Below are positions 3,316 to 62,636 of a stretch of 64,000 nt of DNA, in pieces; position 1 is the stretch's first letter; every line of letters starts with the position of its first letter. The position numbers and the translations under genes were made by a program. The notes under the pieces were generated by a model that was given only the letters and a program-made list of their open reading frames with translations, searched no databases and was not told where the DNA came from. The stretch covers positions 44,817,589-44,881,588 of the forward strand of contig NC_068998.1 of the NCBI RefSeq assembly GCF_001194135.2, read 5' to 3'. This stretch comes from Octopus bimaculoides (lineage: Eukaryota).

Positions 3316-3852
3316 NNNNNNNNNNTATTTTTCGATATTATTATTATTATTATTATTATTCAGGTCACTGCCTGGAATCAAACTCAGAATCTTGGGGTTA
3401 GTAGCCTGTGCTCTTAACCACTATGCCATATCCCCACGGGACGTAAACACACCAGCATCGGTTGTCAAGCGATGTTGGAGGGACAAACACAGACACACAA
3501 ACATATACACACCCATACATACATATATATATATATATACACATTCATACATACAACAGCCTTCTTTCAGTTTCCGTCTACCAAATCCACTCACAAGGCT
3601 TTTGTCGGCCTGAGGTGCCACGCAGTGGGACTGAACCCGGAACCATGTGGTTGGTAAGCAAGCTACTTACCACACAGCCAATCCTANNNNNNNNNNNNNN
3701 NNNNNNNNNNNNNNNNNNNNNNNNNNNNNNNNNNNNNNNNNNNNNNNNNNNNNNNNNNNNNNNNNNNNNNNNNNNNNNNNNNNNNNNNNNNNNNNNNNNN
3801 NNNNNNNNNNNNNNNNNNNNNNNNNNNNNNNNNNNNNNNNNNNNNNNNNNNN
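3316..3852. other. Assembly gaps 3316-3325 and 3687-3852 (others: 4469-4747, 23781-23790, 29512-30237, 36461-36897, 60925-61231, 62627-62636)
   Basis: Runs of N, mostly flanked by microsatellites. Confidence 0.98.
3432..3680 (-). mobile_element. SINE family B with internal (CA)/(TA) microsatellite
   Basis: Reverse complement of head (gtgtggtaagtagcttgcttaccaaccacatggttccgggttcagtcccactgcgtggcacc) and of the tail module. Confidence 0.8.
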
Positions 3853-4023
3853 AAAAGCACTCACTACACTCTCGGAGTGGTTGGCCTTAGGAAGGGCATC
3901 CAGCTGTAGAAACTCTGCCAGATCAGATTAGAGCTTGGTGCAGCCTTCTGGCTTGCCAGTCCTCAGTCAAATCGTCCAACCCATGCTAGCATGGAAAGCA
4001 GACGTTAAACAATGATGATGATG
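3853..4023 (+). mobile_element. Family E: RTE-type retroelement 3' tail ending in (GAT)n
   Basis: aggaagggcatccagctgtagaaac...catgctagcatggaaagcagacgttaaacaatgatgatgatg; further copies at 20430-20552(+), 37535-37700(-), 42905-43100(-), 47551-47655(-), 56030-56255(-). Confidence 0.75.
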
Positions 4024-4468: not shown

Positions 4469-4818
4469 NNNNNNNNNNNNNNNNNNNNNNNNNNNNNNNN
4501 NNNNNNNNNNNNNNNNNNNNNNNNNNNNNNNNNNNNNNNNNNNNNNNNNNNNNNNNNNNNNNNNNNNNNNNNNNNNNNNNNNNNNNNNNNNNNNNNNNNN
4601 NNNNNNNNNNNNNNNNNNNNNNNNNNNNNNNNNNNNNNNNNNNNNNNNNNNNNNNNNNNNNNNNNNNNNNNNNNNNNNNNNNNNNNNNNNNNNNNNNNNN
4701 NNNNNNNNNNNNNNNNNNNNNNNNNNNNNNNNNNNNNNNNNNNNNNNTATATTTATGTATGTGTGTATATATGTATGTATATATTATGTATATTTATATG
4801 TATATATATATATATTTA

Positions 4819-6354: not shown

Positions 6355-7050
6355 TTATTTCTTTATTGCCCACAAGGGGCTAAACATAGAGGGAACAAAC
6401 AAGGCCAGACGAAGGGATTAAGTCAATCACATCGACCCCAGTGTGTATTTGCTTATTGTCCTTGTGCAAGAGCCATGTTAATCTTCTTTGTATCATTGAA
6501 AGTTTGGTGTATGTTCTGCTGAAGCACACACATACAGACACATATGCACACACTGCCCTATTGGGGGACAGCATTCCAGAGAGGGGGTAGAGAAAGAAAG
6601 AGAAAGAGAGAAAACTGATGCTTCAGAGCTGCGCAAATGCAAGTGTGTCGTGTCCACGACATGCTGTGCTTTTTCTCTTTGCTTTTCTCGCTCACCTGTT
6701 TTTCTTGCTTATTTCATTGACCCTTAACTGGTGCTTATTTCATTGACACAGAATTGAACTCAGAATGTGAAGACAGACAAAATGCCACTAAGCGTATTTG
6801 CTCAGCATGCTAACAATTCTGCCAGCTCACTGAGTTCTAGAATCTTTTCTACTCTAGGCACAAGACCTGAAATTTTGGGAGAGGGGGCCAGTTGATTAGA
6901 TCCACCCCAGTATGCAACTGGTACTTAATCTATCAACCCCGAAAGTATGAGAGGCATAGTCAACCTCGGCAGAATTTGAATTCAGAATGTAAAGACAGAC
7001 GAAATACCGCTAAGCATTTCGCCCAGCGTGCTAGCGGTTTTGCCACCTCG
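6355..7050 (-). mobile_element. Cluster of SINE family C copies/fragments (about 6355-6500, 6715-6835, 6845-7050)
   Basis: Repeated gaatttgaattcagaatgtaaagacagacgaaataccgctaagcatttcgccc and tail modules, reverse of 58603-58833. Confidence 0.8.
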
Positions 7051-8642: not shown

Positions 8643-8699
8643 ATTCTGATGAAGATGGAGATGATGACAATGATGATTACAACATTGATGATGATGATG

Positions 8700-9000
8700 G
8701 TGTTTAAAATATACATGAACATTATATGTATGCATATAAACACACACATGCATGCATACATACTGAGAAGTATACATCTAAGTCTGTATTTATAAGACTT
8801 TAAACAATTTGATAACTGACTTGGATACCAGTGTTTTGTCTGATGAGTTTCAAGGATCAATTTGAAAACTTGTAACACACAACTTTGACTCCCAAAGTCA
8901 GTAATCAATATTTTTTTAGCAATTATATAGAAATATATTGGCGTTGAGTTATTGCAACCAGGCTTTCATTCATTTTGTTCTTGTTCAACCAAACACATAC
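8700..9000 (+). repeat. Local direct duplication, copy 1 (copy 2 at 16640-16920)
   Basis: Shared actgagaagtatacatctaagtctgtatttataagactttaaacaa...gaaacttgtaacacacaactttga...ggctttcattcattttgttcttgttca. Confidence 0.85.
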
Positions 9001-9215
9001 GCTCAAATACACACATGCATAACTTACACACACATATAGTCACTCAAGCAACCATCCACATATACATATATACACAAACATACATTTACATACACATATA
9101 CACACAAAAATGTTTCATCCATCTGCACTGCATCTATACATATATGCATGTGCACATACACACACACATCTATGTACCATGAATTAATGGCTCAGATTTT
9201 AATATAAATGCTCTT

Positions 9216-14199: not shown

Positions 14200-14660
14200 A
14201 TCATCATTTAAAGTCCGTTTTCCATGCTGGCATGGGTTAGACAGTTTTACTGAGGTCTGGAGAGCCAGCAGCTGCACCAGGCTCCAATCTGATCTGGTAA
14301 TGTTTCTACAGCTGGATGCCCTCTCTAATGTCAACCACTCCAAGAGCATAGTAGGTGCTTTTTACATGCCGCCAGCACAGGAGCCAGTCATGGGGTACTG
14401 GCATCGGCTACGTTTGGATGGTGCTTTTTATGAGTTACCAGCATGGGAGCCAGTCAGGCAGGCCTGGCATCAACCACATTCAGACGGTGCCTTTTACATA
14501 CCACCAGCTCAGGAGCCAGTCAGGGGACACTGGCATTGAGCACGTTTGGATGATGCATTTTACGTGCCACCAGAATAGGAGCCAATGAGGGGACACTGAT
14601 CACAGCTACGATTTTGGTTTTACTTGACTCATCAGGTCTTCTCAGGCATATCACATCACC
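14200..14660 (-). mobile_element. Family E element with four internal 66-bp tandem units
   Basis: (CAT)n-catttaaagtccgttttccatgctggcatggg end; units start at 14354, 14420, 14486, 14552. Confidence 0.8.
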
Positions 14661-14751: not shown

Positions 14752-15140
14752 GGAGGCGCAATGGCCCAGTGGTTAGGGCAGCAGACTCACAGTCATAGGA
14801 TCGCGGTTTCGATTCCCAGACCGGGCATTGCGAGTGTTTATTGAGCGAAAACACCTAAAGCTCCACGAGGCTTTGGCAGGGGATGGTGGCGAACGCTGTT
14901 GTACTCTTTCACCACAACTTTCTCTCACTCTTACTTCCTGTTTCTGTTGTGCTTGTAATTCAAAGGGTAAGCCTTGTCACACTGTGTCATGCTGAATCTC
15001 CCCCGAGAACTACGTTAAGGTTACACGTGTCTGTGGAGTGCCTAGACACTTGCACGTTAATTTCACAAGCAGGCTGTTCCGTTGATCAGATCAACTGGAA
15101 CCCTCAACGTCATAAGTGACGGAGTGCCAACAACAACAAC
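14752..15140 (+). mobile_element. SINE family A2, full length
   Basis: Pol III A box TGGCCCAGTGG (14762) and B box GGTTTCGATTCC (14805); (CAA)n tail; TSD accatata(t/c)ata at 14738-14749 and 15139-15150. Confidence 0.9.
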
Positions 15141-16639
15141 CATATACATAATAATGTTGTGAAGTAATTGCTTAACAGTATTTAGATTTCTTCCTTTTCG
15201 TTTTCAGTCCAAACCCTGATTGGATCAAATTCATCCTTTGTTATACTCCCTTATAATCCTAGACCAATGTATTGGCATTTTCCTATCACAAAATTCTGGC
15301 TCTGTACCAAATAAAAATCAATGAGTACTTTAAGGCATTCCTGTTAAACAAGTTATTCACAGGAATAAGTGTGGAAAAAATACCGTTATTTTAAGAGTTT
15401 ATTTACAAAGATTTTGGGGTGTTTTTGTAATTTTGTTTACAATTTTATTTTATTTCACCAAGTATTTGCTTTATTTGGTGTCATTTCCTCTCCACTTGTA
15501 AAGTTCTCTCCAACTAAAAGTAAAAATAAAGAAACAAACAAAACAAAAGCAGAGAGTAAAATACAAGATTAGTTGTTCCTTCATTAAATTTGTAAACAGC
15601 AGGGTGTGTGCGTGTGAGCAAGAGTGTGTATCTCTGTGTGCTCACCAGTTCATGTGTTCTGCATGTGCACATGTTCAGGTGTGCTGCAATGTTAAACATG
15701 CTAAGCTGTTGTTAATGTTAATGAAAATACCTTACATCAGCTAGCTAGACATTGGCAGTGAACCATGTCAATATAACGTCATATATTGCAATCTTTGCCA
15801 CCACCGCCACCACTACCAACATCTTCATCATCATCATCACCAAGTGTTGCAGCTCTTGTTGGTTTTACTTGTTAACACTTACAATTGTATTCACTGCAGT
15901 TCTCTCCCTTGATGCAGTCAGTGTTGGTCAACAGGCATTGAAGAAACGTGTAACTCAGAACACACTGCTGGAACACAGCCTTTGATTACTGTTTCAAAAT
16001 GAAGCCAAATTACTTTTCATTATAAGACTTGTTGTCCCACAGATTTATTTTTCAGACCCGTGGTCCTTATTATAAAGATGGTACAGAGTTTGATAAGAAA
16101 GAATTGACCAACACGTTGAGCAAGTCATGAGGCAACAGAAAAGCAGGCTTGTTGGAACAACCTGAAACAGTTCACCATTGAAGTGTTTGATAAAACAAAA
16201 CAAGATATTTCCAGTAATATCGTTTATTTTGTGATATGACTCCTATATCTAGTATTTGAGATATTCGTGTGTTTTACTCACATAGCTATGCTTGACTAAC
16301 TTCTGATGACTTAAAAGTCTGTATTATAAACCATCACTGAGTCAATAGTATTTTAGTGAATAATAGACTTGTAAGAGAATCAGAGATGACCAAGATAACA
16401 GGTTGAGATGAACTATCAGTAGGTGATATCTCAATGACACCACTTTCCTACTCTGTTCTCTTATCCACAAATGGTGCAGTCCACTTAGCTGTTAATAGGC
16501 TGTCTAAGTTAAGTATGGTTCAATGCTCCAAATATTGTAAGCACAGAACAAATTAGCAACTCTTCACATGACTTCACCATGTCAACGATGACGATGATGA
16601 TGGTGGTGATGACAAGGACGACTACGATGACAATGATGA

Positions 16640-16920
16640 TGACTAAAATATACATGCATGTTATATGTACACTCGTAAATACACACATGCATGCATGCAT
16701 ACTGAGAAGTATACATCTAAGTCTGTATTTATAAGACTTTAAACAAATTGATAACTGACTTCTGATGAGTTTCAAGGATTAATTTGGAAACTTGTAACAC
16801 ACAACTTTGATTCCCAAGTCGGTAATCAATGCTTTTTCTTAACAAACTTGTGTTAGATATTGGTGTTGAGTTATTGCAGTAAGGCTTTCATTCATTTTGT
16901 TCTTGTTCAGCCAAACACAC
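16640..16920 (+). repeat. Local direct duplication, copy 2 (of 8700-9000)
   Basis: Colinear similarity with a 16-nt deletion relative to copy 1. Confidence 0.85.
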
Positions 16921-16984
16921 ACATACATTCTTATACACACACACAAACATTCACACACACACACACACACACACACAGACATTT

Positions 16985-17549: not shown

Positions 17550-17892
17550 GTAGAGGGTGACCCCTTTGGTCATCAATGACCATGATATCGCACCTACAGG
17601 GTTACCCTTCCAGGCACGAGTTCAGGCAAGGCTGTTTATGGAAGACCAGTAGTCGCCCATACATACCAGCCTCCTCTCTCCACACCACCGATGTTATCCA
17701 AGGGAAAGACAAAGGGGCTGATACAGCTTGGCACCAATGATGTTGCAACTCATTTCTACAGCTGAGTGAACTGGAGCAACATGAAATAAAATGTCTTGCT
17801 CAAGAACACAACATGCAGCCCAGTCCGGAATCGAACTCTCAACCTCATCATCGTAAGCTCGATGCTCTAACCACTGAGCCATGTGCCTTCAC
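17550..17892 (-). mobile_element. SINE family H (A1-like tRNA head and core, different tail)
   Basis: Minus strand gcacatggctcagtggttagagc A box, gttcgattcc B box; matches 57197-57515. Confidence 0.8.
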
Positions 17893-18528
17893 AAATTGTT
17901 GTAACAAATCATCTTTGAGGAGAGGGGTGAGCGATTTTCATGAAGGTGAGTCATGTTATTTTCCGGCCATTATTCACGTGAACGAAATTAATATAATGGA
18001 ACACATATAACCAATAACAGTCTGAGTTGAATTATCCAAATGATGGATGAATCATATAACCACCAGAATTTGCAATGTTTTATTTTGTCCTCTGTAATTT
18101 TTTAACAGATATAAAGTCTTGTTATTTTTTAATTTTTGTTTCTTGTACTATTTCCATGAGTTAAGACATAACATATATTATATAATGGTATGCAAGATTC
18201 CTTAGTAAAATGAAGGGAGACCTTATACAGCCCTGTTAAAAGAACATGAAAAGTAGGTTTCATCTGATTACATCTTTTGTCAACCTCACAAGCATTGAAA
18301 ACAGAGGGCACCATAATTATAGCAATATTTAAGGGTTTCTGTAGTTAGTTAACTATTATCTTAAATAACATGGTCCTAGACTCGTTATGTCTGAAAAAAA
18401 GAGGGACAATGGTCAAGGCTCAAATGCATTTGCTCATAGGTCTATTCAATCAGGACTGATCTTGGATTAAACAACAGCAGTTACAGGTTTATATAGGAAG
18501 AACATTTCACCACTGTATGTAGTGGCAG

Positions 18529-18911
18529 AGTGGTGGTGCAATGGTTAGGGCAGCGGATTTGCGGTCATAGGATCGCGGTTTCGATTCCCAGACCGGGCGT
18601 TGTGAGTGTTTATTGAGTGAAAACACCTAAAGCTCCATGAGGCTCCAGCAGGGGATGATGGCGAACCCTGTTGTATTCTTTCACCACAACTTTCTCTCAC
18701 TCTTACTTTCTGTTTCTGTTGTGCTTGTAATTCAAAGAGTCAGCCTTGTCACACTGTGTCACGCTGAATATCCCCGAGAACTACGTTAAAAATACACGTG
18801 TCTGTGGAGTGCTCAGCCACTTGCACGTTAATTTCACGAGCAGGCTGTTCCGTTGATCGGATCAACTGGAACCCTTGACATCGTAAGCGACGGAGTGCCA
18901 ACAAACAACAA
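18529..18911 (+). mobile_element. SINE family A2, full length
   Basis: Near-identical to 14752-15140; perfect 10-bp TSD gtagtggcag at 18519-18528 and 18912-18921. Confidence 0.9.
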
Positions 18912-20356: not shown

Positions 20357-20903
20357 CACACACATATATATGCATGCATACATATATATATATATATATA
20401 TATGCACACAGACACACACATATACATACAGGCATCCAGCTGTAGAAACTGTTCCAGATCAGATTGGAGCCTGGTGCGGCCATCTGGCTCACCAGTCCCC
20501 AGTCAAACTGTCCAACCCATGCCAGCATGGGAAGCAGACGTTAAACGATGATATATATACTTAAACAAGAAAAGACATCACTCCACTATATCATAACCTC
20601 TGATATAGACCCCACCCCACCAGTGAACAGCAAATAGTCACATGATTGCTTGTCTGGTTTCATGATTTCTCTTAAAATTAAACTTGTATTTTTAACTCGA
20701 AAATGTTCTTTCTCTTTGTATTAGCCTTTAAGGCTAATCACACAAAATATGTTGTTTTTCTTTCTTTACTTCACACACTGATGCAATAAAATAATAATGA
20801 TGATGACGATGATGTTGATTACAACAACAACAATGATGATGATAAAAATGATGATGATGATGATCCCAAATAATGTATGTTTTTTTCCTTACTTTTAATC
20901 ATG

Positions 20904-20943
20904 TCTAACACAATTTTCTTTCTTCTTTTAATTACAGGTAAGT
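20904..20943 (+). promoter_or_regulatory. Candidate recursive splice site (ratchet point)
   Basis: Branch point CTAAC 20905-20909, polypyrimidine tract, TACAG (AG at 20936-37) directly followed by GTAAGT; no AG between 20733 and 20935. Confidence 0.6.
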
Positions 20944-21827
20944 TTCTACCTGGCAGTACTAAAGCAGACAGTTTACCTTGTTTGGTTTGATATATATATT
21001 TCCTATCTTTTCACTTGTTTCGAAGTTTTGTACTTTTATTTGAAATGTCCTAAAAACATAGAGCATTTACCCATGAAGTCAATTTTAACTGATTGATCAA
21101 CTCAGTTCTGCATTCATAGACTACGTTCAATAAACTCCTTCTGAGCTTTTAAGATGTGGACCTCAAGCAATTATTTTTATAATATGAACAACACCAAAGA
21201 CAATTTAGTTTTAGTTAAAGTTTGCTATTAAATTTGTTATACAGATGAAACATTAACAATGTTCCCCACAATATTTGCAGACCACACTTCCAGAATTGTG
21301 CGACAGATGTAGAGAATGATTGTTCTGAATATTTTAATGAAAGGTCAACTTTGAGAAAACATAGATAATTTGTTAAAAATAAACAAATACTGTATTATTT
21401 TTCTCTTTCCAAAACAAACGCTGTCATAGACAAAATGACACATATTTTGAGAAAGTTTGTTGTCAATTAAATTGACCCCAGTATATGACTGGTGTGATTC
21501 CAGAAGGAAGAGAAGTACAGCCGACCTTGGAAAATGATATCCCAAAAATATATTGATATTGTATTATTTTTCTCTTCCCAAAACATAAACATTCATATAT
21601 TTGGAGCAAAAACTTAACATTCATAATAATCATGTATTCTAACATATTTTGAGAAAGTTTGTTGTTATGTTGATATCAGTATGTGACTGGTATGATCCTG
21701 GAAGAGAGAGTAACACAGTTGGCCTTGGCAAGATTTGAAAATGAATTGTAAACTGCTGTAACTTTATATGGCAAAGCATAAAATGTATAAGTGCTTTTTC
21801 TGATACTGCCATCTATCTGCCTGTAAG

Positions 21828-22189: not shown

Positions 22190-23000
22190 ACTATACTTTC
22201 ATAATGGCTTCAAAGTTTGTCACAAGGGCAACAATTTGGGGGGAGGAGATGAGTCGATTACATCGACCCCGGTGTTCAAATCGTACTTATTTTATCAACT
22301 CCGAAAGGGTGAAAGATAAAATTGACCTCGGTGAAGTTTGAACTCAGAACGTAGCGGCAGGTGAAATACAGCTAAGCATTTTGTCCTGCATGCTAATGAT
22401 TTTGCCAGCCTTTGACTATCCTTTCATAATAATGATACCAGCAACAACAACAACATCAGCAGTTTATGATTTAGGCACAAAGTCAGCAATGTTAAGAGGT
22501 GGGAGTTGAGTTAATTCCATCAACCCTTATACTTGGCTGGTACTTTAGTTTTATCAACCCCAAAAGGACAAAAGACAAAATCTACCTTACTCAGAACATA
22601 TAGTGTTGGAACAAATACCATGAGGCACTTAATACAATTATCTTAATCGTCCTGGCAGTTCTTGCCATTTTTAATAATAATGGTAATCTTTTCTACAATA
22701 GGCACAAGGCCTAAATTTTGCAAAGAGCCGACTAGTTGATAACATCAACTACAGTGCTCAACTGGGACTTGTTTTTTTTCGACCCCAAAAGGATGAAAAG
22801 CAAAGTCAACCTCAGCTGAATTTGAACTCAGGCAAACAATTCTGCCCACTCACCACCTTCTTTAGTGATAATTATTATAAGAATCTTTAATATAGTCCCA
22901 AAGCCAGAAATTTTGTGGGATTGTTTCTGTTTTATTGACTCACTCCATCTCAAGTTGGATAGAAGATGAAGTTAGTCTTGGTAGGAGTTGAACTCAGAAC
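22190..23000 (-). mobile_element. Tandem cluster of 3-4 SINE family C copies
   Basis: Repeated ggcacaagg...ttatcaacccc...aaagtcaacctc...tttgaactcag modules separated by AAT/CAA tracts. Confidence 0.75.
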
Positions 23001-23708
23001 AGAAAATTCATACGTTTGGAGCAAAAACTTAACATTCATAATAATCATGTATTCTAAAATATTTTGAGAAAGTTTGTTGTTAATTATGTTGATCTCAGTT
23101 ATGTAACTGGCATGACCATGGAAGGGAGAGAAACACAATTGGCCTTAGCAAGATTTGAAAATGAATTGTAAACTGGTGTAACTTTATAAATACCACAGAA
23201 ACATAATGTCCACTATTGATTCTTCATTATTTTGAAATAAATGGAAATTCTAGAATGCCAAACTTCATGGGTATATGCATATGTTAAGGGCATTATCAAA
23301 TTAGAATTAGTTTGATTGAATTGCATGCTTTTATAGTGATTTGTTCTTATTCCTGTCTCCAATCCATCCTTGCCATCTTGTAAGAATGTTCAAGCTTCCC
23401 CCAACTATTTGCATGTTATATACAGTTTTATAGTTGTTGCTGTTGGTGTGGCACCTGAATTTTTTTTACAGATTTTTTTATTTAAAACGTGCATTATTAT
23501 TTAGTGAGATGTATCTCAGTATATAGACAAATAGCATCTTGTTTATTTTTTTTACATATTTGTATCCTTTTAAATCCCTGTTCCCATTAGTTTGCCTCAT
23601 GAAATCTTTGTATGTAGACCCATATATGTTTATTTGTATCTGCTTTGTGGAGTGATGTTATGTGCTTTTACTTTCTTTTGTCCATTTACTAGCTTAGAAT
23701 ATTTTCAA

Positions 23709-23751
<43 letters not shown>

Positions 23752-24107
23752 TTAAGTCATGCATGTGTTGGGAGTAACACNNNNNNNNNNTAACACAATT
23801 ATAGTTTGAATCATATAACAACAAAAGGGTTCCATGAGCTTCTTTTGTTAAGTTGAAATACTCAGACCTATATTGCATTTAAGAACAACCTTGTCTGAAG
23901 ACTGCAAAGCCACATCTTAGTGTGAAACTAGCAGCGTTGCCTTTCTTTTATCTTGTAAGTTCATGTAACCGTAATATATATATATACATACATACATACA
24001 TACATACATTCCTAAAGAAATAATTGAGATTCAGTTGAATTAGGTACTTAAGTTGAAGCACCGAGTCAGTCTGGTATTATCCGCACAGCTCGAAGAAGCG
24101 TGAATAC

Positions 24108-25544: not shown

Positions 25545-26879
25545 TATATATATATATATATATATATGTATAAGTGATATTCAATTCATAGCCACTTTAA
25601 CATGGCTGGCCATTCAAGTGGACTCAACTGCGAATTTTTTAACCCCAAGAGGACATCTCCTCTAGCTGGCTAATGATGCACCGCTGCATCCGATTAAATT
25701 GTGAGCAGGGGAGTAAACCCCTATCATCTCCTAGCAACAGGACCAGTAGACCAGTCCTGGTTTTGGACTATTTCTGCCACTCCTCAATAGTGGAAACCTC
25801 GTATGCATGTGTATTAAACGAACATGTCAATTAACAACAAAAATAATAGGGCTAATGTGAAAATGATTTTCTCTTTAGTCTATATTTGTTTCGGAAGAAA
25901 TTTCACTTTCAACATTATAATGAGTATCCAACATTCTTGCTATGTGTACATATGTGCGTGTGTGTGTTTTTGTGAATGTGTTTGACATGCATATAGATTA
26001 TCAAGCAAGTTTATAAATGATAAGGAGTGAAATACTCAATAGAATGAATATAGAGTTAATTTACATATATATATATATATATATATATATTACACCTTTG
26101 CAAGCATGAAATACTCAGCTCCTCATGTTAGCAGTAGTTTCAGGTCCCATGGAAATTCACTCAATACTTAATGTGCCATTGAATGATTTTGAAACTACTT
26201 GTAACATGAATTGACTAGTTTATACTTTTGCGTGTGTGTGCGTGTGTATTTGGTTTTTCAAGATGACTGTATCTTGTACACTGCTGTTCAATTATTTATG
26301 TTAGTGGTGGAAGTTCAGTTTATCTTTCACTTGAATACCCAGATAATTTTGTTTACCAGTTTGTGTTTGTGTATCCATTCTTGTCTAAGCATATAACGTA
26401 CCCAAGTGTTAATACACACACACACACACACATGAAGGTAGAAAGATATTAGATACGTTCTTCATAGTAAAGATATATTGATGGACATCTTATATTTTTA
26501 TCTGGGCATATATTAACTATTTGTGGTTCTTCTTTACAATTTTTTTATTATTTTTCATCCATTTTTTTAAGACTATGATTACATTTTTGTACTATTTTTC
26601 CTTGCTTTTTCAAAAAAAAAAATATTCCTATTCATTTATTTCTAGAAAAATGTTTTTATTTTCTTTACTAACATCTTTCTTTTCTTTCATTCTCTTTGAT
26701 ACTTCTTTTCTTTCTTTTCACCCTTCCCCTCTTACATCATCACTCTTTCTTACCTCTCTCTCTCTCTCAACATATGTTATTGTCTTTCTCTCTTTTATGA
26801 TATAATACATGAAACACAGTCTGTATATCCTTGGCAGTCACCGTGAATTTTCAACAACACCCCTCCTCCTCAGTCTACT

Positions 26880-27760
26880 TCATCTTAGACTGAGATGTAC
26901 ATTTATATGGTAACATTAGTGATGATATTGGCGGTAGTGGTATTAGTGGTACTAGCATTGTAGTGTTGGTACTGGTGTGGTTAGAGTCAGTACTAGTGAT
27001 ACTGGTGATGGTCGCGCTAGATGTATTGGTACTTGTGATGTTGGTGGCAGTGATGATGCTAGGGGTACTAGTGCTTGTATTGGTGGTGGTGGTGGTGGTG
27101 GTGGTGGCAGTATTGGTGGTGATGGTAGTGGTGGTGGTGGAAGTGCTTGTGATGTTAGTATGAGTATTAGTGGAACTATTGGTGTTAGCATGTGTATTGG
27201 TGGTAGGTATTGGCAATCGTAGGGGTGTTAGTATCTGTACTGGTGGTCTTGGCACTAACGATGCTGTTAGTGATGCTGTTTGTTGATGAAAGGTGGCAGA
27301 AAATTATGATGATGATGGTGGCGGCGGCGGCGATGGCGCTCGTGGTGGTGGTGGTGGTGGTGGTGGTGGTGGTGATTATGTCTACCCTTGAAACCAATGT
27401 AATACCAGTACCGAAGAACAGTTGCAATGACCCCAGACCGCGGTGGTGGTGGTGTTAGTGGCAATGATAATGATGGTGATGGTGGTGGGGAAGATGATGG
27501 TGTGGATATTGATGGTGGTGGTGGTGGTGGTGTTGGTGATGACATTGATGGTGGTGGTGGTTGATGATGGTGATGATTGACTATAATGATGGTAGTGGTG
27601 GTGGTGGTGGTAGTGGTTTTGACCATGATGATGATAAAGTGGAGGAGGGGGCGAGGGGTTAATAGTGGCAGTGGCAGTGAGATGGAGTGATTGATGTTAG
27701 GGAAACATGATGAAGAAGAAGAAGAACGACGAGAAGAAGATTCTGGCGATGTAAGGTGAG
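26880..27760. repeat. (GGT)/(GAT)/(GTA) low-complexity tract
   Basis: Degenerate trinucleotide runs; Thr/Val/Gly-rich ORFs in several frames. Confidence 0.85.
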
Positions 27761-28029
27761 GCTAATAATGGAAGACTGTTTAAATGAAGATGGTTAGATG
27801 AAGGAAATGAAGGATGATGCTGGAAACGAAGAGAAACTTAGGGGGAAACTTAGGTATGATAGCTAGGTGGGTGGGTGGGAGGAGAAGAAAGATTGAGGAT
27901 GTCAGCGGGGGAAATGAGGATAATTGAATAGGGATGATGCTTATAGATAATAATGGAAACAGCAATGCTGGTGATGACAATTATAATGTGGGTTAGAAAG
28001 AGCAGGAGGAAGATGCCAGCGGTGGTGAT

Positions 28030-28320
28030 GGCTACAACCCTGTCCTACTGCTACTACCACCACCGCTACTTATTACAATTGATACTACTACTACTACTAC
28101 TACTACTACTACAACCACCACCTCCACCACTATTACAACCATCACCACCACTATTACAACCACCACCTCTACAACCACCACTACAACCACCGTCACCACT
28201 ACTCCTGCTACTACTACCACCACAACCACCACTACTACTACTACTACAGTCACCACTGCAACCACCACCACTACTGTTTCTACTACAACCACTACCACCA
28301 CCACTACTACTACAATCATA
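28030..28320. repeat. (CTA)/(CCA) low-complexity tract
   Basis: Degenerate trinucleotide runs. Confidence 0.85.
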
Positions 28321-28614
28321 TTGGACTTTTATTTGTCAATCCTGAAAGGATGCAAGGTAAAGCTGCCTTCAGTGGGATCTGAACTCAGAGTTTAAAGAGG
28401 TAGACTGCACACTACAAGGCATTTTATTCAACACTGTAAGAGCATTACCAACTGGTTGCCTTAATCCAACTTGTCACCTTAATCCAATTGGTCACCTTAA
28501 TCCAACCCTAACATCTTGAGAAAAGATACATTGGGTAAATGTAGTCCAAGGTACACTAAAAAAACAGACTGGATGATCATGGCTGGAATGCTTTTGATCA
28601 TAGGTTTGTTGAAT

Positions 28615-28790: not shown

Positions 28791-30237
28791 CGATATTACT
28801 ATCTATAAGTAACACCCACCATATTAAAACACAATAACAATAATAACCAGAGATAGAAGCTATTTTATGACCAATTATGTTTCTAAATGACAGCCACAAG
28901 ATGTAATCATACAAAATTTTCAATGACTTAATAATTGTGGATTTTCCTCCTTTTTTTAATTTGTTATTTTCTGATAATTAAACAGTTATTAAATTTTCCT
29001 GTTATAAATATTTCTGCAGCTTAAATTTTTTTTTTCTTTTTTTTTTTTAACTTTTTGTTCTGTTCCATTACTCTCTTTCTATTTTTTTTTTTTCCTTCTT
29101 CATCTTCTTCTTTTAGCAATTTCCAAATTTCTCAACATAATGTGTTTTGAAACATTTAAAAGATAATTTTTTTTTTTCTTCCCCAGCTGTATTTCTTTAT
29201 CTTATTCTTTTTATTTCTTTCATTTATTTTTATTTTTTTAGAATGATTTCTTTTATTATATTCTCATATTTGTTAGCTGTCATCGACTGTTTAAATACAA
29301 AATGAGTGTGTCTGTATAGGCATATGCATATGTATGTGTGTGTAGTGTGTGAATAAACATATATGTGCTTTTATGCAAGTGTTCGTATTTATGTGTGTGT
29401 GTGCCTGTGTATATGTGCATATGCATGTTTGTATATGCGTATGTGTGTGTATTTGCATGAATGTTTGTGATGTTGCTAAAATCTCTTTCACATAATTTAG
29501 TTTTACTTCTGNNNNNNNNNNNNNNNNNNNNNNNNNNNNNNNNNNNNNNNNNNNNNNNNNNNNNNNNNNNNNNNNNNNNNNNNNNNNNNNNNNNNNNNNN
29601 NNNNNNNNNNNNNNNNNNNNNNNNNNNNNNNNNNNNNNNNNNNNNNNNNNNNNNNNNNNNNNNNNNNNNNNNNNNNNNNNNNNNNNNNNNNNNNNNNNNN
29701 NNNNNNNNNNNNNNNNNNNNNNNNNNNNNNNNNNNNNNNNNNNNNNNNNNNNNNNNNNNNNNNNNNNNNNNNNNNNNNNNNNNNNNNNNNNNNNNNNNNN
29801 NNNNNNNNNNNNNNNNNNNNNNNNNNNNNNNNNNNNNNNNNNNNNNNNNNNNNNNNNNNNNNNNNNNNNNNNNNNNNNNNNNNNNNNNNNNNNNNNNNNN
29901 NNNNNNNNNNNNNNNNNNNNNNNNNNNNNNNNNNNNNNNNNNNNNNNNNNNNNNNNNNNNNNNNNNNNNNNNNNNNNNNNNNNNNNNNNNNNNNNNNNNN
30001 NNNNNNNNNNNNNNNNNNNNNNNNNNNNNNNNNNNNNNNNNNNNNNNNNNNNNNNNNNNNNNNNNNNNNNNNNNNNNNNNNNNNNNNNNNNNNNNNNNNN
30101 NNNNNNNNNNNNNNNNNNNNNNNNNNNNNNNNNNNNNNNNNNNNNNNNNNNNNNNNNNNNNNNNNNNNNNNNNNNNNNNNNNNNNNNNNNNNNNNNNNNN
30201 NNNNNNNNNNNNNNNNNNNNNNNNNNNNNNNNNNNNN

Positions 30238-36349: not shown

Positions 36350-36897
36350 GAAACCATGCCAGCATGGGAAAATGATGATGGTGATGATGATGCACATATA
36401 TTCAGACATACTGACACACACTCACACATGCATACATACATGTATATATGCATATATATANNNNNNNNNNNNNNNNNNNNNNNNNNNNNNNNNNNNNNNN
36501 NNNNNNNNNNNNNNNNNNNNNNNNNNNNNNNNNNNNNNNNNNNNNNNNNNNNNNNNNNNNNNNNNNNNNNNNNNNNNNNNNNNNNNNNNNNNNNNNNNNN
36601 NNNNNNNNNNNNNNNNNNNNNNNNNNNNNNNNNNNNNNNNNNNNNNNNNNNNNNNNNNNNNNNNNNNNNNNNNNNNNNNNNNNNNNNNNNNNNNNNNNNN
36701 NNNNNNNNNNNNNNNNNNNNNNNNNNNNNNNNNNNNNNNNNNNNNNNNNNNNNNNNNNNNNNNNNNNNNNNNNNNNNNNNNNNNNNNNNNNNNNNNNNNN
36801 NNNNNNNNNNNNNNNNNNNNNNNNNNNNNNNNNNNNNNNNNNNNNNNNNNNNNNNNNNNNNNNNNNNNNNNNNNNNNNNNNNNNNNNNNNNNNNNNN

Positions 36898-36968
<71 letters not shown>

Positions 36969-37848
36969 TACATGTGTGTGAGTTCACTATAACTTAAGAA
37001 ATAGTTTCAGAGCACCATATTCTTCCCATATTAGAATATTCAGCTATATTCCAAAGCTTTCTCACATCTTACCTTGGTTCTCTGTTCTTCATTGTTCTAC
37101 ATCTATTATTGAGTTTAACCTTCTGGCCATAAAGATTCTGTTTCAATCCTTTCATCATCATCATCATCATCATCATCGACAGCATCTTTGTTATCATCAA
37201 CATCATCATTATTGGTTTTTCTCTTTTCTGACGCTTGATTGGCTGATCATAAATGTCTTGAGTCAGTCAAGTTTCTTTCACTTGAGGCCTTTGTTAGTGT
37301 AGTAGACTTGTATAGAAACACTTCAGTGACTGACTGAGTGAACAGAATACAGGACACATTGAATAATGTCATCTGAAATATATTATATCAGAAATGGGAT
37401 GTTCATGGCTGGAATGCCTTTGATCGCAAGTCTGCTGGATTGGTGCTGACCTGGCCCTAGCCATCATGACAAACAGCAACGTAGAGAGGGAGCTCGTATG
37501 TAGAAGTAGGAACCATATCTTACTTAAACCATGTCCTGATCATCATCATTATCATTAACATCTGATTTCCATGCTGGCATGGGTTGGATGGTTTGACAGG
37601 AGTTGGTATGCTGGAGGGTTGCACCAGGCTATAATGGTTTGTTTTGGCATGGTTTCTATGATTAGATGCCCCTCTTAGTGTCAGCCAAATTTTCGTCATA
37701 TCACTCCTTACAATGTGGAAACCATCGATCAATGCTGGAGTATCTTCAAACAGGAGTCAACTCAATCAGGTCTGACCTGTAGCACAACATCATCATCCAC
37801 TTCTGACTAAGGTACTCTCACTATAAAGCAAGCATGGACAACATTTTT

Positions 37849-47035: not shown

Positions 47036-48079
47036 TATATAATTATTTGAACTTTGGTTATTAACAAAACATCCCTGTAATGAGAATCAGTGCAAGTCTT
47101 CTTCCATCATCTCCTTTCTACTCTCTATTAAAACATACAATCACTTTAATTAGTTCATTGATAATGTGTATATTGTATAAATACACATAAGTGACTGTTG
47201 CAAGGAATTAGTTGAAGAATTATTACATTCTAGCCAAAAGTAGTTAACTAATCTTACCATCAGCCAAATTTAGCACTCAAGGAAGAAGTAAATCTTAATT
47301 AGGGACCATTATGTGGCTCAAAGAATTGATGAATTCTTCCTGGTTATTGTCGTTAACCAGACAATTAAGCTGTAATATCTTGGAACAGTTTAATCTCTGG
47401 TAGAGAAGAGGCTTCAGAGTTGGTGTACACACATGACCCTGGGTTAAGAATTTAGTATTATATCCTCATCATTCAAGGTTTGATCCCACCTTGGACAATG
47501 TCTTGGTTGACTAATGCATTTGTGAACAGAATTTGGCAAGAAGAACCTGTTATCATCATCATCGTTTAACGTCCGCTTTCCATGCTAGCATGGGTTGGAC
47601 GATTTGACTGAGGACTGGTGAACCAGATGGCTACACCAGGCTCCAATCTGATCCTGATAATCTTTCAAATCACTCTGTGTCAACTTGAAAATAGGGAAGA
47701 TATTCATTAATTAATGTACTTCAGTGTATCTCCACCACAAATTGCATAGTCATAGTTAATTGTCTTTGGTCTAGATAGTCATGGTTGAAATGTCTTTGGT
47801 CATAGATTTGTTTCATCGGATTTGACTTGGCTGTATACGGCCACACTGCCAAATGGGGAAACTACTACAAAGTGGTTTGATCTGCTAGAAATATCAGCCA
47901 AAATATTCTCTCATATCACATTTTATTATTTTGAAAAGAAGGATGCAATACTTGTAAATTTATTACATTTGGGAATATAAAAGATTGAATGGCCACAGTT
48001 CTGAATGTGTCTCTAAACACAAGTCTGCTGAATCAAAGCCAATTTGAAGTCAAGGCAAGTAGAACAGCACTCCATCTCC

Positions 48080-48420
48080 ACCACCACTACCACCAACAAC
48101 AACAATCGTACCAACAACAACAACAATTGTACCAACAACAACACAATCACAAACAGCAACATCTACCACCTACAACAACAAGAGCATGACCACTACCATC
48201 ATCACCACCACCACTATTAACAACAACAAAAACACTACCAACAACAACAGCACAATCATCATCAACAGCAACAAAACATCCACCAACAACAATAACAATA
48301 CCAACAACAACAAGAGCACCACCACCATCAAAAGCAGCTGAACTACCATCAACAACACTACCTCCAAAACCATTCTACCACCACCACCACCACCATCAGC
48401 ACCATCATTACCATCAGTGG
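48080..48420. repeat. (CAA)/(CCA) low-complexity tract
   Basis: Degenerate trinucleotide runs. Confidence 0.85.
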
Positions 48421-51400
48421 TGTATTAGAACACTGAATCAATATCTAAAACTGTAATGAAGGAACAAGTAACGGTAGAGACAATTAACTTTATTACGGTA
48501 ACCTATTAATGCTATTGTTGTGTTGGTCCCATTGAAATCTGTTTGGGAAACCTTTTGAGCAAACTTAGACCATTAAACAAGCAAACTTCTAAATGCTTTA
48601 CTCTAGATAGTCAAGCACAATACATCCCAGTTGTAGTTAGTCAACTTGTCAGTATGAAACAAAATATCTGCAGTTAATTCACATCCAGATGATACACACA
48701 AGCACCAATATACACACACAAGCACCAATATACACACTCAAACACACACATGCATACAAACATACACACACAAACACACATGCATACAAACACACATACA
48801 TATACAAACACCTAAACATAAACATAGAAGACACAAAATGCATAAAAGACATACTCACACACAAACCATCAAGGGAACCCTCTATCGGGTCACTCTACCA
48901 GTAAGAAATACCTACTAAATTCCTCAAAATCATACACCCTGTTGTTTCACAATAGGAAAGACACACAGGACAATGTTGTCATAGTTATGCAAAAATACAG
49001 GGTGGCACATATGTGCAAACAAACACATAAATACACATATAATCACACATGCTCACATATACACACACACACACACACATTTCTGAATAGAAAAACAAAA
49101 CTTTACTCATTAGTTCACTTGTAAATTAAGGAAGACATCTATTTCAAAAGAGAAAAAAAACCCCTAAAAATACAAATGTAGTAAAGCCACACATTTAGGG
49201 GTCAGACTTGGATAGTAACAATATTTTAGAAACAGCCTGAATTTTTGCTATTACATAGGGTCGGTGTTCAGCATTAGGATTTAGTCCCCTTCCAGTTCTC
49301 ATTTTATAGATTTGAAGAATTATAGGCAATATTTCTGTTACATCTCTCTCCTACCATACTTTTAGACAGTTATTCCATTATAGCAGTCTACCATTTTATG
49401 TAATCATGATTATGCCTTCTTCTTCAGACAAGCCATTCATCATCTTTTTGCTCGTATTCATAGATCAAACTTCCGACAGTTTATATACGTCTCTTGCAGT
49501 TTGCAGCAAGTTCTATACATCATTTCAGATTCTTTCTCACCCATCTCATTCTATACCCTTCCATTCTGATATAAACACGCTGTAAATATCACTCGCTCAT
49601 ATATCAGCTATTTCAAACAACTGTTTCAAACTTCATCCCAAACACTAATGTCATTACGTAATAAACAAGATTGGGTTTTTGCATGATGCAGTTTACTCAA
49701 TTTTACCAGCACATATAAATTTTGTTGGTAATATATCAGCCATTTCTGGTTTAGGTATGTGGGGAACCCTTTTAGAACCAAGGTTGAATTACAAGTGCAC
49801 TTAACAACATGTGGAGGATGCAGCTGTTCTTAGTAAAAATAATGAGTCTTTAATTTTACAAATTCATATAATGCAATTTATTTTAAGTTACTGTTTTGCT
49901 TTTAAGGCTTAAACAAGTGTTTTTATATGCCTTTCTTTTCAGTTCTCCATGGGGCAGTTCTTGATTTGAACATGGATATAATTTCACCTATAAACAAGGA
50001 GTTTCTCATATCTGATCGAGATGGTGGAAAAATATTTAAAGAGGTCAAAAAAGATATATATATATATATATATCATTAAAACATAATTTAGTACAACGTA
50101 AACACCATTTGGGAATTTAAAAATTTATATTTTGGCAACAGCCATGTTATTTAAAATAACAAACTAGCAAGGATGTTATTGTACATGGTTGTTTGAACAA
50201 GTAAAAATGCCAGCCATATTTCACTCAGATCAAACCTACATTCCAAGGGAAAAACATATCGGATTAGATACTCTGGAGTACTTTGTGCTTATGAAAAAGA
50301 TGGGATGTTCATAGCTGATATGCCTTAGATCACAGGTTTTGCTCAATCAGGACAAACCTAGGGTTAAATAATATTAACAACACTAACTATGACCAAATCT
50401 TCCAGACAAATATTTGCTAACCAATAAATATACTACAACATATATTCATATACCACATTGAACTTCCTACAATATATACTCCACTTTGCCTTTCATCCTC
50501 CTGGAGTTGATAAACCAAGTACCAGTTGGGCACTGATGTAGTGTGGCAGGGAGGAGAGCAGATAATCACCTTAACTTCTGCCCTGAAATTGCTGGCCATG
50601 TGCCAAAGTTTGAAATCGATGTTACCAGTGAGGGACTGGTGTTATTTTTTTCTGTGACAACAATATATTGATCTCTCATCTACTTTCTGCTATGACACAG
50701 GAACTAAGAAGTGGTTATTGAATTTTCTTTGGAACCTAGAGGGGTACATTTTTTTTTCTTTTGTTCTTGTATTTACGCTTCAGTGATGTGGTACTCAAAA
50801 CAACAGCTACTAACATTTTATATAATGCTTGACACCTCAATAATAAGCTTACCACCATGGCAAGGCTGGAAGTAATTCTATTACTTCGCTCTGACATGCA
50901 ATCCACACCACTACCACCACCACCATCATCCCTATAACTATCATCTTCAACCTCCACAACCATTATTACCACTATCATCACTACCACCATCAACTACCAC
51001 TGTCAACTACCACCAATACCATCCACCACCATCAAGCTCAAGCTTAACAACAACAACAATAACAACAGCAGTAAATTCTACAAGTCATTCTTTTTGATGT
51101 ATGATAGAATATTTACTTGTTAATTTTTATGGAATGAAATTCTGTAGAAAGAATAAAGATATGAAAGATTAAAGAATAAAGAATAAAGGCATAAAGCATA
51201 TTGTGAAATACTTGATAATCTGATACTTCGATATTTGATACTCCGATATTTGATACTCCGATACTTAAAAAAATTAAACTGGATTATCTACTACAAACAA
51301 TCTATCCATAGAGAATGTTGTTAAGTATCATTAACCTGTCAACCACATAGCCTCTTTCTGTAAATATCCCTTATTTCTCTATCTAAATATCCATATAATA

Positions 51401-51820: not shown

Positions 51821-52348
51821 GATGAAAACTCACAGCTTATTTTGCTGGATATGATGGAAAGTGTCAAATGTCCACAGCCAGCAGTCTAAGGTGACACTTG
51901 TATAAACCTTGCAAAGAATTCTTGCAGTTTCAAGCAATGCTGATTTTTGTAGATATTCTCCCTTTACATTTGTAACAATCTTTTTGAGCCATGTTGATGG
52001 CTGAGTGCTGCTACTTCCAAGTATGCCAATTACTATTGGTATTACGTCTATCCTCTTCATTGACCACAACCTTCGTATTTCCCACGTCAAATCATCATAG
52101 TTGTTCAGTTTTTCTTCCTTCTCCTTGATCTTGTTGTCACTGTGACATGTTATATTGATTATCATGCATCTTCTTTCTTTTTTCTTCACTACAATAATGT
52201 CTGGTTGGGTGATCAGACTGAATCATTGCATCCCACAGGAATTTGCAATTTTCATTCTAGGTGATTCCTTCTGGGGTTTGCTCATACCATATCTTTGTTC
52301 TTTGTAAGCTGTGATTTCCACAGAGCTCTCAATGGATCATTCTTGCCA
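51821..52348 (-). mobile_element. R4/Dong-clade RLE non-LTR retrotransposon, 3' fragment
   Basis: WYEQTPE...FLWDAMIQ...PDIIVV...EKLNNYDDLTWEIRRLWSMKRIDVIPIVIGILG...LQKSALLETARIL; (AAT)n tail. Confidence 0.85.
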
Positions 52349-52350
52349 TG

Positions 52351-52390
<40 letters not shown>

Positions 52391-53112
52391 AATAGATGTT
52401 GCACAGTATACAATATCGTGACGTTGTTGATTGAAGATATTGTGTCTACCTGGGGTTTGTACTGTTTGTAAAGTCACAACAAGGACCCCAAACAGACAAT
52501 ACTTTACGCAATATGCACACAGTTCCAAGTAATGCCGACTTTTGCAATACATCTAGATTGTAGGGTATTTCTAAGATTTCCCGATGTTTTTTCAGATTGG
52601 GTGGTATTGAACCCAACGCTCCAATGACAATAGGGATAACCTTCATGTTCGACTCTCGTAGCTGCCACATCTTAGTGATCTCAATTCTCAGGTCTCCATA
52701 TTTATCAACTTTTTCTTTCATGATCTCTTGGCGCTTCTACATCGATTATTAGGCACTCTTGTTTGTCCCTCCTAAGGGTTACTATATCCGGCCTTCGGTG
52801 CTCTAACATTTGGTCTGTCTGGAAATCAAAATCCCAGAGGATATTTGCCTTCCCCTCCTCGTCTATTACCTTTTCTGGTGTATGTTGGTACCAAGCCCCC
52901 GTAACCTTATATCCATACTTATGGCATAGTAGCCAGTGGATGTTTTGGGCTACTTTGTTGTGTCTATGCTTGTACTCTTTCTGCGCAAGACTTTCACAAG
53001 CACTAACAATGGGAGTCACCCTTTCAACCCTCTTCCCACACATTCTGCAGAGGTCCTATATTCTTGTGTGGTATATATTCTTTTTCACTGAATTGGTATT
53101 CACTGCCTAGTC
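52391..53112 (-). mobile_element. R4/Dong-clade RLE non-LTR retrotransposon, 3' fragment with zinc knuckle and endonuclease
   Basis: CRMCGKRVERVTPIVSAC (CCHC, His lost), RH..VA..IHW, LWDF..QTD..LEHRRPDI...IIDV, then frameshift to KEKVDKYGDL...IVIGALG...LQKSALLGT; (AAT)n on both sides. Confidence 0.92.
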
Positions 53113-57196: not shown

Positions 57197-57515
57197 GACC
57201 CCCTTCGGTCATGACTGACCATGGGATTGCACCTAGAAAGTTACCCTCCCAGGCACAAGTCCGGACAAGGTTGTTTATGGAAGACCAGCAGTCGCCCATG
57301 CATACCTACCTCCTATCTCCACGCCACCAGTGATATCTGAGGGAAAGGCAAATGCCGATACAGGTTGGCACCTGTGACGTCGCAACTCATTTCTACAGCT
57401 GAGTGAACTGGAGCAACATGAATTAAAGTGTCTTGTTCGAGAACACAACAAGCAGCCCAGTCCAGGATTCGAACTCCCAATCATAAGCTCTAACCACTGA
57501 GCCATGCACCTTCAC
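57197..57515 (-). mobile_element. SINE family H
   Basis: Colinear with 17550-17892. Confidence 0.85.
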
Positions 57516-62626: not shown

Positions 62627-62636
62627 NNNNNNNNNN

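What the first reader, a model, noticed from the sequence alone, without database searches (positions are those of the whole stretch)
20733..20943. Textbook recursive splice site (zero-length exon) in the middle of repeat-rich DNA
Seen: CTAAC branch point about 28 nt upstream, clean polypyrimidine tract, TACAG acceptor immediately followed by a consensus donor GTAAGT, and an AG-free zone of about 200 nt (20733-20935). Established: AG|GT ratchet points subdivide very long introns in Drosophila and vertebrates. Inference: the window lies in a giant intron of a plus-strand gene that is removed stepwise. I do not know of recursive splicing being characterised in cephalopods, whose introns are very long. 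Alternative: GTAAGT is the donor of a 205-nt non-coding exon starting at the acceptor ctttaag|20733.
Basis: partly seen in the sequence, partly recalled or inferred. Interest (0 to 1): 0.75.

Follow-up and report, generated by a model that had tools for sequence, protein, structure and literature searches.

The report
Unvalidated recursive-splice-like motif in repeats
The sequence really does contain a near-perfect acceptor-plus-donor splice motif, but nothing shows it lies in a transcribed intron or is used, so it is most likely a chance look-alike or the end of a cryptic non-coding exon, not a demonstrated recursive splice site.

Summary
CTAAC (20905-20909) has its branch A 30 nt before the junction. 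A pyrimidine tract follows, then TACAG|GTAAGT at 20937|20938. The upstream 203 nt contain no AG.

The composite is the strongest splice-like AG|GT in the window: 21.7 bits on my own approximate scoring matrix, against 14.4 for the runner-up. It meets the sequence rules of Drosophila ratchet points.

The bare 8-mer AGGTAAGT occurs at chance frequency (1 seen, 1.0 expected). The AG-free zone is largely a by-product of an (ATG)n microsatellite. I estimate tens of equally good composites by chance in a genome of a few gigabases, and hundreds if the branch point is not required.

The interpretation could not be tested.
- No coding exon, Pfam domain or protein homologue was found anywhere in the window, so a plus-strand host intron is unproven.
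- No related sequence from another genome could be retrieved, so conservation is untested.
- One feature now considered necessary for recursive splicing in flies and mammals is absent: there is no usable donor within 300 nt downstream to close a cryptic exon.

My estimates: chance pseudo-site about 0.6, real non-coding or cryptic exon donor about 0.2, recursive site about 0.12.

The parts
20905..20909 (+). CTAAC branch-point consensus; the branch A at 20908 is at -30 from the junction
   Evidence: Read directly. CTAAC with its A at -21..-36 occurs at about 1% of positions, and CTRAY at about 5%. Fly ratchet-point branch points peak at -30.
20910..20937 (+). Pyrimidine tract (TTTTCTTTCTTCTTTT at 20914-20929) followed by AATTACAG: an acceptor with TT at -5/-6 and CAG at -3..-1
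   Evidence: The 3'ss PWM score of 8.76 ranks 5 of 3,328 AG on +. A tract-only score this high is reached at 2.1% of + positions and 0.9% of - positions.
20938..20943 (+). Consensus donor GTAAGT. CAG|GTAAGT is the perfect 9-nt complement of the U1 snRNA 5' end, a point from general knowledge.
   Evidence: The 5'ss PWM score of 12.9 ranks 1 of 3,609 GT on +. It is the only AGGTAAGT in the window on either strand.
20733..20935 (+). AG-free zone (203 nt). It is also the body of the alternative 205-nt exon.
   Evidence: AG positions are listed and the gap ranking. Stops occur in all three frames.
20785..20865 (.). (ATG)n/(AAC)n microsatellite inside the AG-free zone
   Evidence: Tandem Repeats Finder arrays at 20797-20819 and 20833-20864. 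Direct-repeat family D1.
20694..20732 (+). Upstream candidate acceptor region: TTAAC, the tract TGTTCTTTCTCTTTGTATT, then TAG (20722-20724) and AAG (20730-20732)
   Evidence: The 3'ss PWM score is 4.14 for AG 20723 (rank 46 of 3,328) and 1.78 for AG 20731 (rank 139).
20935..20952 (+). Small hairpin, CAGGTA / loop AGTTTC / TACCTG, that would pair the donor
   Evidence: It is present in the minimum-free-energy fold of 20895-20975. The fold is not more stable than shuffles (z = -0.79), so this is probably coincidental.
20431..20552 (+). SINE-like interspersed repeat copy, about 385 nt upstream of the site
   Evidence: Five other copies in the window at 79-91% identity.

Best explanation
This is a fortuitous pseudo-splice site. 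A T-rich, low-complexity stretch next to an (ATG)n microsatellite happens to abut a CAG|GTAAGT 9-mer in repeat-rich, non-coding DNA. The result imitates a juxtaposed acceptor and donor.

It has no demonstrated role. If the plus strand is transcribed at all, I infer the following behaviour. U1 snRNP would bind the perfect donor. By exon definition the donor would pair more readily with the acceptor 205-213 nt upstream, giving an occasional non-coding pseudoexon. Acting as a zero-length ratchet point is less likely, because no donor lies downstream to define a recursive-splicing exon.

Shown: the motif, its rarity within the window, and the absence of a detectable host gene, a downstream donor or relatives. 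Inferred: that it is not used for stepwise intron removal.
For: - AGGTAAGT occurs at chance frequency (1 against 1.04 expected).
- The AG-free zone is explained by a microsatellite and T-rich sequence.
- Composites of this quality are expected tens of times per genome of a few gigabases, and hundreds of times without the branch point.
- The surroundings are 28% tandem or interspersed repeats, with a SINE 385 nt upstream and degenerate 170-200-bp repeats 370 nt downstream.
- No Pfam domain or protein homologue turned up in any long ORF or predicted exon.
- No second strong recursive-like site exists on the + strand.
- No downstream donor for an RS-exon.
- Base rates from mammals are low. Only 19-20 recursive sites were found in mouse brain. 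Of 84 junction-supported AGGT candidates, 46 were unannotated exons (PMC8797253).
Against: - The composite is unusually good, 21.7 bits and 7 bits above any other AG|GT in 128 kb of both strands.
- It meets every sequence rule derived from about 197 fly ratchet points, including TT at -5/-6 (99.5% of fly sites) and a branch A exactly at the modal -30.
- The estimated chance rate with the branch point is only about 5e-4 per strand per window.
- If the source lineage used fly-like recursive splicing at hundreds of sites, a motif this strong would have a substantial posterior probability of being real.
- Absence of detectable exons is exactly what a giant intron would look like.
Confidence: 0.6

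Rival explanations
1. It is a genuine recursive splice site (ratchet point). The window lies in a very long intron of a plus-strand gene. The upstream exon is first spliced to the AG at 20937, and the regenerated donor GTAAGT at 20938 is then used to remove the rest of the intron.
For: - Perfect AG|GTAAGT, a strong Py tract, TT at -5/-6 and CTAAC with its A at -30 match the fly rules and the AGGTAAGT and Py enrichment of mouse sites.
- It is the top combined score in the window by 7 bits.
- No exon is detectable in 64 kb, which is compatible with a giant intron.
- The + strand carries slightly fewer AATAAA (76 against 105) and fewer strong donor hexamers (GTAAGT 8 against 14) than the - strand. 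This is mostly explained by base skew and is not significant.
Against: - No downstream donor to form the cryptic RS-exon said to be required in flies and mammals. The best site at +20..+300 scores 1.35 bits, the 5th percentile of random positions; the nearest decent one is at +554.
- Host gene, strand and intron are undemonstrated.
- Conservation is untestable here.
- It sits amid young-looking repeats and a microsatellite, not in a unique conserved island.
- Recursive sites are very rare in the other large genomes studied.
Confidence: 0.12
2. GTAAGT at 20938 is the donor of a real but non-coding exon, from a lncRNA, a UTR, or a poison or cryptic cassette. The exon is 213 or 205 nt long and starts at the acceptor 20724|20725 or 20732|20733. 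The acceptor-like sequence at its 3' end is then incidental.
For: - A decent acceptor lies at a typical exon distance upstream (AG 20723, score 4.14, top 1.4% of AGs, with a TTAAC and Py tract before it) and the window's best donor lies downstream.
- That is the architecture exon definition needs.
- In mouse, most junction-supported intronic AGGT candidates turned out to be unannotated exons (46 of 84).
Against: - Stops in all three frames, and much of the body is microsatellite, so it cannot be an ordinary coding exon.
- No transcript evidence is available.
- Pseudoexons with good flanking sites are common in long non-coding stretches (general knowledge).
- A decent acceptor within 300 nt upstream is expected by chance in roughly one case in six (my estimate from the rank).
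Confidence: 0.2
3. The AG at 20937 is the acceptor of a short alternative terminal exon. It would be polyadenylated after the AATAAA at 21129-21134, about 190 nt downstream.
For: A strong acceptor and an AATAAA at a suitable distance, read.
Against: - AATAAA is abundant in this AT-rich DNA (76 on the + strand).
- A perfect U1 site at the very start of the exon would be expected to suppress nearby polyadenylation (general knowledge of U1 telescripting).
- There is no transcript evidence.
Confidence: 0.03

Closest known systems
Drosophila intronic ratchet points (zero-nucleotide-exon recursive splice sites; Burnette 2005, Duff 2015, Pai 2018, Joseph 2018)
   Same: - Juxtaposed acceptor and donor around AG|GTAAGT.
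- A prominent pyrimidine tract, with TT at -5/-6.
- A branch-point A at -30.
- No exon nearby.
   Different: - No cryptic RS-exon donor downstream.
- Host intron, sense strand, conservation and RNA intermediates are all undemonstrated.
- It is embedded in SINE and microsatellite sequence.
- The source organism is not a fly and is unidentified.
Vertebrate recursive splice sites and RS-exons (Sibley 2015; mouse survey PMC8797253)
   Same: AGGTAAGT complementary to U1, and a pyrimidine-rich 20 nt upstream.
   Different: - Vertebrate sites work by exon definition with a downstream donor, and lie in first or second introns longer than 50 kb in very long neuronal genes.
- None of this could be shown, and the downstream donor is missing.
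Intronic pseudoexons and cryptic or poison exons
   Same: A 205-213-nt segment flanked by a plausible acceptor and a consensus donor. It is non-coding and lies in repeat-rich DNA.
   Different: The donor is preceded by an unusually strong acceptor signal of its own. An ordinary pseudoexon does not need that.
Dual-specific splice sites (AGGT usable as either 5' or 3' splice site; PMC10809524)
   Same: One AGGT with both acceptor and donor context.
   Different: Described dual-specific sites tend to have weaker matches to both consensus motifs. Here both are near-optimal, and usage is unknown.

Membership tests
Recursive splice site / ratchet point (fly type) | [quoted passage not shown] | tested here: met
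   TACAG|GTAAGT at 20933-20943. The 5'ss rank is 1 of 3,609 and the 3'ss rank 5 of 3,328.
Recursive splice site / ratchet point (fly type) | Prominent pyrimidine tract with TT at -5/-6 (196 of 197 fly sites) | tested here: met
   TTTTCTTTCTTCTTTTAATTACAG has T at -5 and -6. The AA at -7/-8 interrupts the tract.
Recursive splice site / ratchet point (fly type) | Branch point 21-36 nt upstream (mode -30) | tested here: met
   CTAAC with its A at -30 (criterion). This is a motif only; branch usage is not testable here.
Recursive splice site / ratchet point (fly and vertebrate) | Cryptic RS-exon: a weaker donor a short distance downstream (about 50 nt, variable), allowing exon definition | tested here: not met
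   The best GT at +20..+300 scores 1.35 bits, the 4.9th percentile of random positions. The nearest decent donor is at +554. The requirement is stated in PMC8605326. The test used my own approximate PWM.
Recursive splice site / ratchet point | Lies on the sense strand of a long intron (over 10 kb in flies, over 50 kb in mouse) of an expressed gene | tested here: inconclusive
   No Pfam domain in 106 long ORFs. No homologue for 82 unique ORFs and predicted exons. No annotation is available, so a giant intron on either strand and intergenic DNA remain equally possible.
Recursive splice site / ratchet point | Evolutionary conservation of the motif relative to its flanks | not testable with these tools
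   No related sequence was retrievable. Exact-ORF look-ups, a protein search with 11 local ORFs and a metagenome 31-mer scan were all empty. The site is not repeated within the window.
Recursive splice site / ratchet point | RNA intermediates: exon-to-site junction reads, saw-tooth coverage, recursive lariats | not testable with these tools
Ordinary cassette exon or pseudoexon ending at 20937 | Acceptor and donor 50-300 nt apart | tested here: met
   Acceptors at AG 20723 (4.14 bits, rank 46) and AG 20731 (1.78 bits). The donor is at 20938.
Ordinary cassette exon or pseudoexon ending at 20937 | An open reading frame through the exon (for a coding exon) | tested here: not met
   Stops in all three frames for both the 213- and 205-nt versions. 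It could only be non-coding or a poison exon.
Dual-specific splice site | The same AGGT observed in use both as donor and as acceptor | not testable with these tools
   Sequence context permits both. Usage data are unavailable.

The most novel reading that the evidence does not exclude
The site is a working zero-length ratchet point in a giant intron of a non-insect, non-vertebrate animal. The site would operate without a recognisable downstream RS-exon donor. That would extend recursive splicing to a third major animal lineage and suggest a route that does not depend on exon definition.
Probability: 0.1. Interest if true: 0.55.

Novelty: not a real feature. Interest (0 to 1): 0.2.

Why it matters
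If the site were shown to be used, it would be the first recursive splice site reported outside insects and vertebrates, as far as the searched library shows. No paper there pairs 'recursive splicing' with 'octopus', and only one incidental paper pairs it with 'cephalopod'. That would bear on how very long neuronal introns are processed in large invertebrate genomes.

A single sequence-only candidate does not make that case. The mechanism is already shared by flies and mammals, so finding it elsewhere would be expected, not surprising. The practical value of this window is as one entry in a genome-wide census of such motifs, sense against antisense in long introns. Such a census could test the idea properly.

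Tried and rejected
1. Finding the same or an orthologous locus elsewhere. Exact look-ups of the 37-aa ORF spanning the site and of a 66-aa neighbour were not on record. A chimeric protein query of 11 ORFs from 20589-21394 gave no hit. An exact 31-mer scan of metagenome contigs gave none.

2. Identifying the organism. A retrotransposon-tail ORF (52446-53043, minus strand) found only 52-56% identical relatives on unnamed ENA contigs, next to RVT_1 ORFs. This says nothing about taxon, so 'cephalopod' stays unverified.

3. Finding host exons. Pfam on 106 long ORFs gave nothing. A 4,984-aa query of 82 unique ORFs and PWM-predicted exons gave nothing.

4. The site as part of a transposable element. 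It is not repeated in the window, and no terminal inverted repeats flank it.

5. A hairpin sequestering the donor. It is present in the fold but not better than shuffles.

6. Strand-of-transcription hints from AATAAA and donor-hexamer counts. The differences are small and mostly follow base skew.

7. tRNA and Rfam scans. Only a U6 pseudogene was found.

8. Burnette 2005 and Sibley 2015 are not held in the library. Their content is cited only through papers that were read.

Full report
**The observation.**
- CTAAC lies at 20905-20909.
- The pyrimidine tract TTTTCTTTCTTCTTTT (20914-20929) is followed by AATTACAG.
- The AG is at 20936-20937 and is followed directly by GTAAGT (20938-20943).
- The nearest upstream AGs are at 20723 and 20731, so 20733-20935 is AG-free.
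- Counting the G at 20937 as -1, the branch A (20908) is at -30 and positions -5/-6 are TT.

**Is it more than chance?**
- The core 8-mer AGGTAAGT is not enriched. It occurs once on the plus strand and never on the minus strand, against first-order Markov expectations of 1.04 and 1.21.
- The 203-nt AG-free gap is long, joint 4th of about 3,330 on the plus strand. Five gaps of 200 nt or more exist on that strand. This one contains an (ATG)n/(AAC)n microsatellite, so it is largely compositional and not a designed AG-exclusion zone.
- The full composite is an outlier within the window. I scored it with my own approximate position weight matrices, not MaxEntScan. The donor ranks 1 of 3,609 GT and the acceptor 5 of 3,328 AG on the plus strand.
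- The combined score of 21.7 bits is 7 bits above any other AG|GT on either strand.
- A pyrimidine tract this good is found at 2.1% of plus-strand positions. A CTRAY with its A at -21..-36 is found at about 5%.
- Multiplying these through gives about 5.5e-4 such sites per strand per 64-kb window.
- Markov-chain simulations gave 0.1 per Mb per strand before requiring a branch point.
- So the composite is rare in a single window. In a genome of a few gigabases, tens are still expected by chance, or hundreds without the branch-point requirement. A reader scanning many windows for many kinds of feature will meet such sites.

**What surrounds it.**
- The window is AT-rich (about 34% GC) and is a draft scaffold with eight N gaps.
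- About 28% is tandem or interspersed repeat by self-comparison alone.
- A SINE-like element with five further copies in the window ends 385 nt upstream of the site. Degenerate 170-200-bp repeats begin about 370 nt downstream. Several other repeat families are present.
- The roughly 600 nt that include the site are not repeated in the window and are not flanked by terminal inverted repeats. The motif was therefore not inherited from a repeat consensus that I can see.

**Is there a host gene?** I found none.
- The 106 longest non-low-complexity stop-to-stop ORFs gave no Pfam family.
- Eighty-two ORFs and splice-site-predicted exons from unique sequence across 1943-54562 gave no homologue among 5.8 billion proteins.
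- The only protein-like sequences are transposon remnants. One is the tail of a non-LTR retrotransposon ORF at 52446-53043 on the minus strand. Its relatives sit immediately after RVT_1 ORFs on ENA contigs.
- This picture fits a giant intron on either strand and fits intergenic DNA equally well. The premise 'intron of a plus-strand gene' is therefore untested.
- Strand counts of AATAAA (76 against 105) and of strong donor hexamers (GTAAGT 8 against 14) lean slightly towards fewer processing signals on the plus strand. They largely follow the T>A and C>G base skew and are not significant.

**Related sequences.**
- Exact look-ups of ORFs spanning or next to the site were not on record.
- A protein search with 11 local ORFs found nothing.
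- An exact 31-mer scan of metagenome contigs found nothing.

**Comparison with known recursive sites.** The roughly 197 fly ratchet points have these properties (Duff et al. preprint):
- AG|GT with a donor consensus and a prominent pyrimidine tract.
- TT at -5/-6 in 196 of 197 sites.
- Branch points at -36..-21, with a mode at -30.
- Host introns of 11-133 kb.
- Strong conservation.

The present site meets all the purely sequence-level rules.

Later work states that intronic recursive splicing requires a cryptic RS-exon, closed by a weaker donor a short distance downstream (about 50 nt, variable). The same exon-definition logic holds in mammals (PMC8605326; PMC8797253). Here the 300 nt downstream are unusually poor in donor-like sequence. 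The best GT scores 1.35 bits, the 5th percentile for random positions, and the first decent donor is 554 nt away. That feature was tested and not met, so I do not file the site as a member of the family.

Base rates in the only other large genomes studied are low. Nineteen to twenty sites were found in mouse brain. More than half of the junction-supported intronic AGGT candidates turned out to be unannotated exons.

- An acceptor at 20724 (TAG, score 4.14, top 1.4% of AGs, preceded by TTAAC and a pyrimidine tract) or at 20732 (AAG, 1.78 bits) lies 213 or 205 nt upstream of the donor.
- That is a normal exon-definition unit.
- All three frames carry stops and much of the body is microsatellite, so it could only be a non-coding, poison or pseudo exon.

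**Weighing the explanations.** I combined rough counts:
- chance composites, tens per genome;
- real donors that happen to follow an acceptor-like tail, a few to some tens, restricted to non-coding exons but favoured by the upstream acceptor;
- real recursive sites, an unknown number in this lineage, penalised by the missing RS-exon donor.

This gives about 0.6 for a fortuitous, unused or only sporadically used pseudo-site. It gives about 0.2 for the donor of a real non-coding or cryptic exon and about 0.12 for a true recursive site. The small remainder covers other readings, for example an acceptor of a short terminal exon ending at the AATAAA at 21129-21134.

These are judgement-based estimates. 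The recursive reading would rise sharply if the lineage proved to use fly-like ratchet points at hundreds of sites.

**Novelty.** In the searched library no paper pairs 'recursive splicing' with 'octopus', and only one incidental paper pairs it with 'cephalopod'. A validated site would therefore be new for the clade. It would still be a new member of a known mechanism. As it stands, this is an unvalidated motif match.

**A minor structural note.** The donor can pair with TACCTG six bases downstream (CAGGTA/TACCTG). The local fold is no more stable than shuffled sequence (z = -0.79).

Noticed in passing
window 6425-6527 (minus strand): Full-length match to U6 snRNA (Rfam RF00026, 53.7 bits against a gathering score of 44). 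The catalytic ACAGAGA box reads ACAAAGA, the AGC triad reads AAC, and there is no terminal T run. It is most likely a decayed U6 pseudogene or retrocopy.
   Followed up: yes
window 20431-20552 (+), 3895-4016 (+), 56038-56159 (-), 14200-14320 (-), 47558-47653 (-), 37555-37630 (-): A SINE-like family of about 122 bp, with six copies in the window at 79-91% identity. The copies end in ...GTTAAACGATGAT. No tRNA-like head was detected by ARAGORN.
   Followed up: partly
window 51830-53043 (minus strand): Three consecutive ORFs in different frames form the frameshifted C-terminal part of a non-LTR retrotransposon ORF. Relatives are 52-56% identical and follow RVT_1 ORFs on large ENA contigs. Pfam itself found nothing.
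   Followed up: partly
window 21579-21768 and 22995-23188: Two direct repeats of about 190 bp at 89% identity, 1.4 kb apart. They bracket sequence that itself matches many other places in the window. This could be a small LTR-like or composite element.
   Followed up: no
window 17561-17892 / 57200-57515; 18542-18911 / 14770-15139; 16593-16959 / 8648-9034: Further interspersed repeat families, 330-390 bp at 79-91% identity, on the same strand in each pair. One of them carries the window's second-best donor, AAG|GTGAGT at 17946.
   Followed up: no
window 26001-28400 and 48001-50000: Sharp local GC-skew excursions, +0.37 at 26-28 kb and -0.33 at 48-50 kb. The first coincides with long purine- or pyrimidine-biased microsatellite tracts, which also give the longest AG-free gaps and low-complexity ORFs.
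   Followed up: no
window 20947-20956 (+): TACCTGGCAG, immediately after the donor, is identical to 10 nt of the U1 snRNA 5' region as I recall it from memory. It is the arm that pairs with the donor in the small hairpin. About 0.1 such match is expected by chance in the window, and Rfam finds no U1 here.
   Followed up: partly
window 3316-3325, 3687-3852, 4469-4747, 23781-23790, 29512-30237, 36461-36897, 60925-61232, 62627-62636: Eight runs of N (assembly gaps), mostly flanked by dinucleotide microsatellites. The window is a draft scaffold, so distances across these gaps are uncertain.
   Followed up: no
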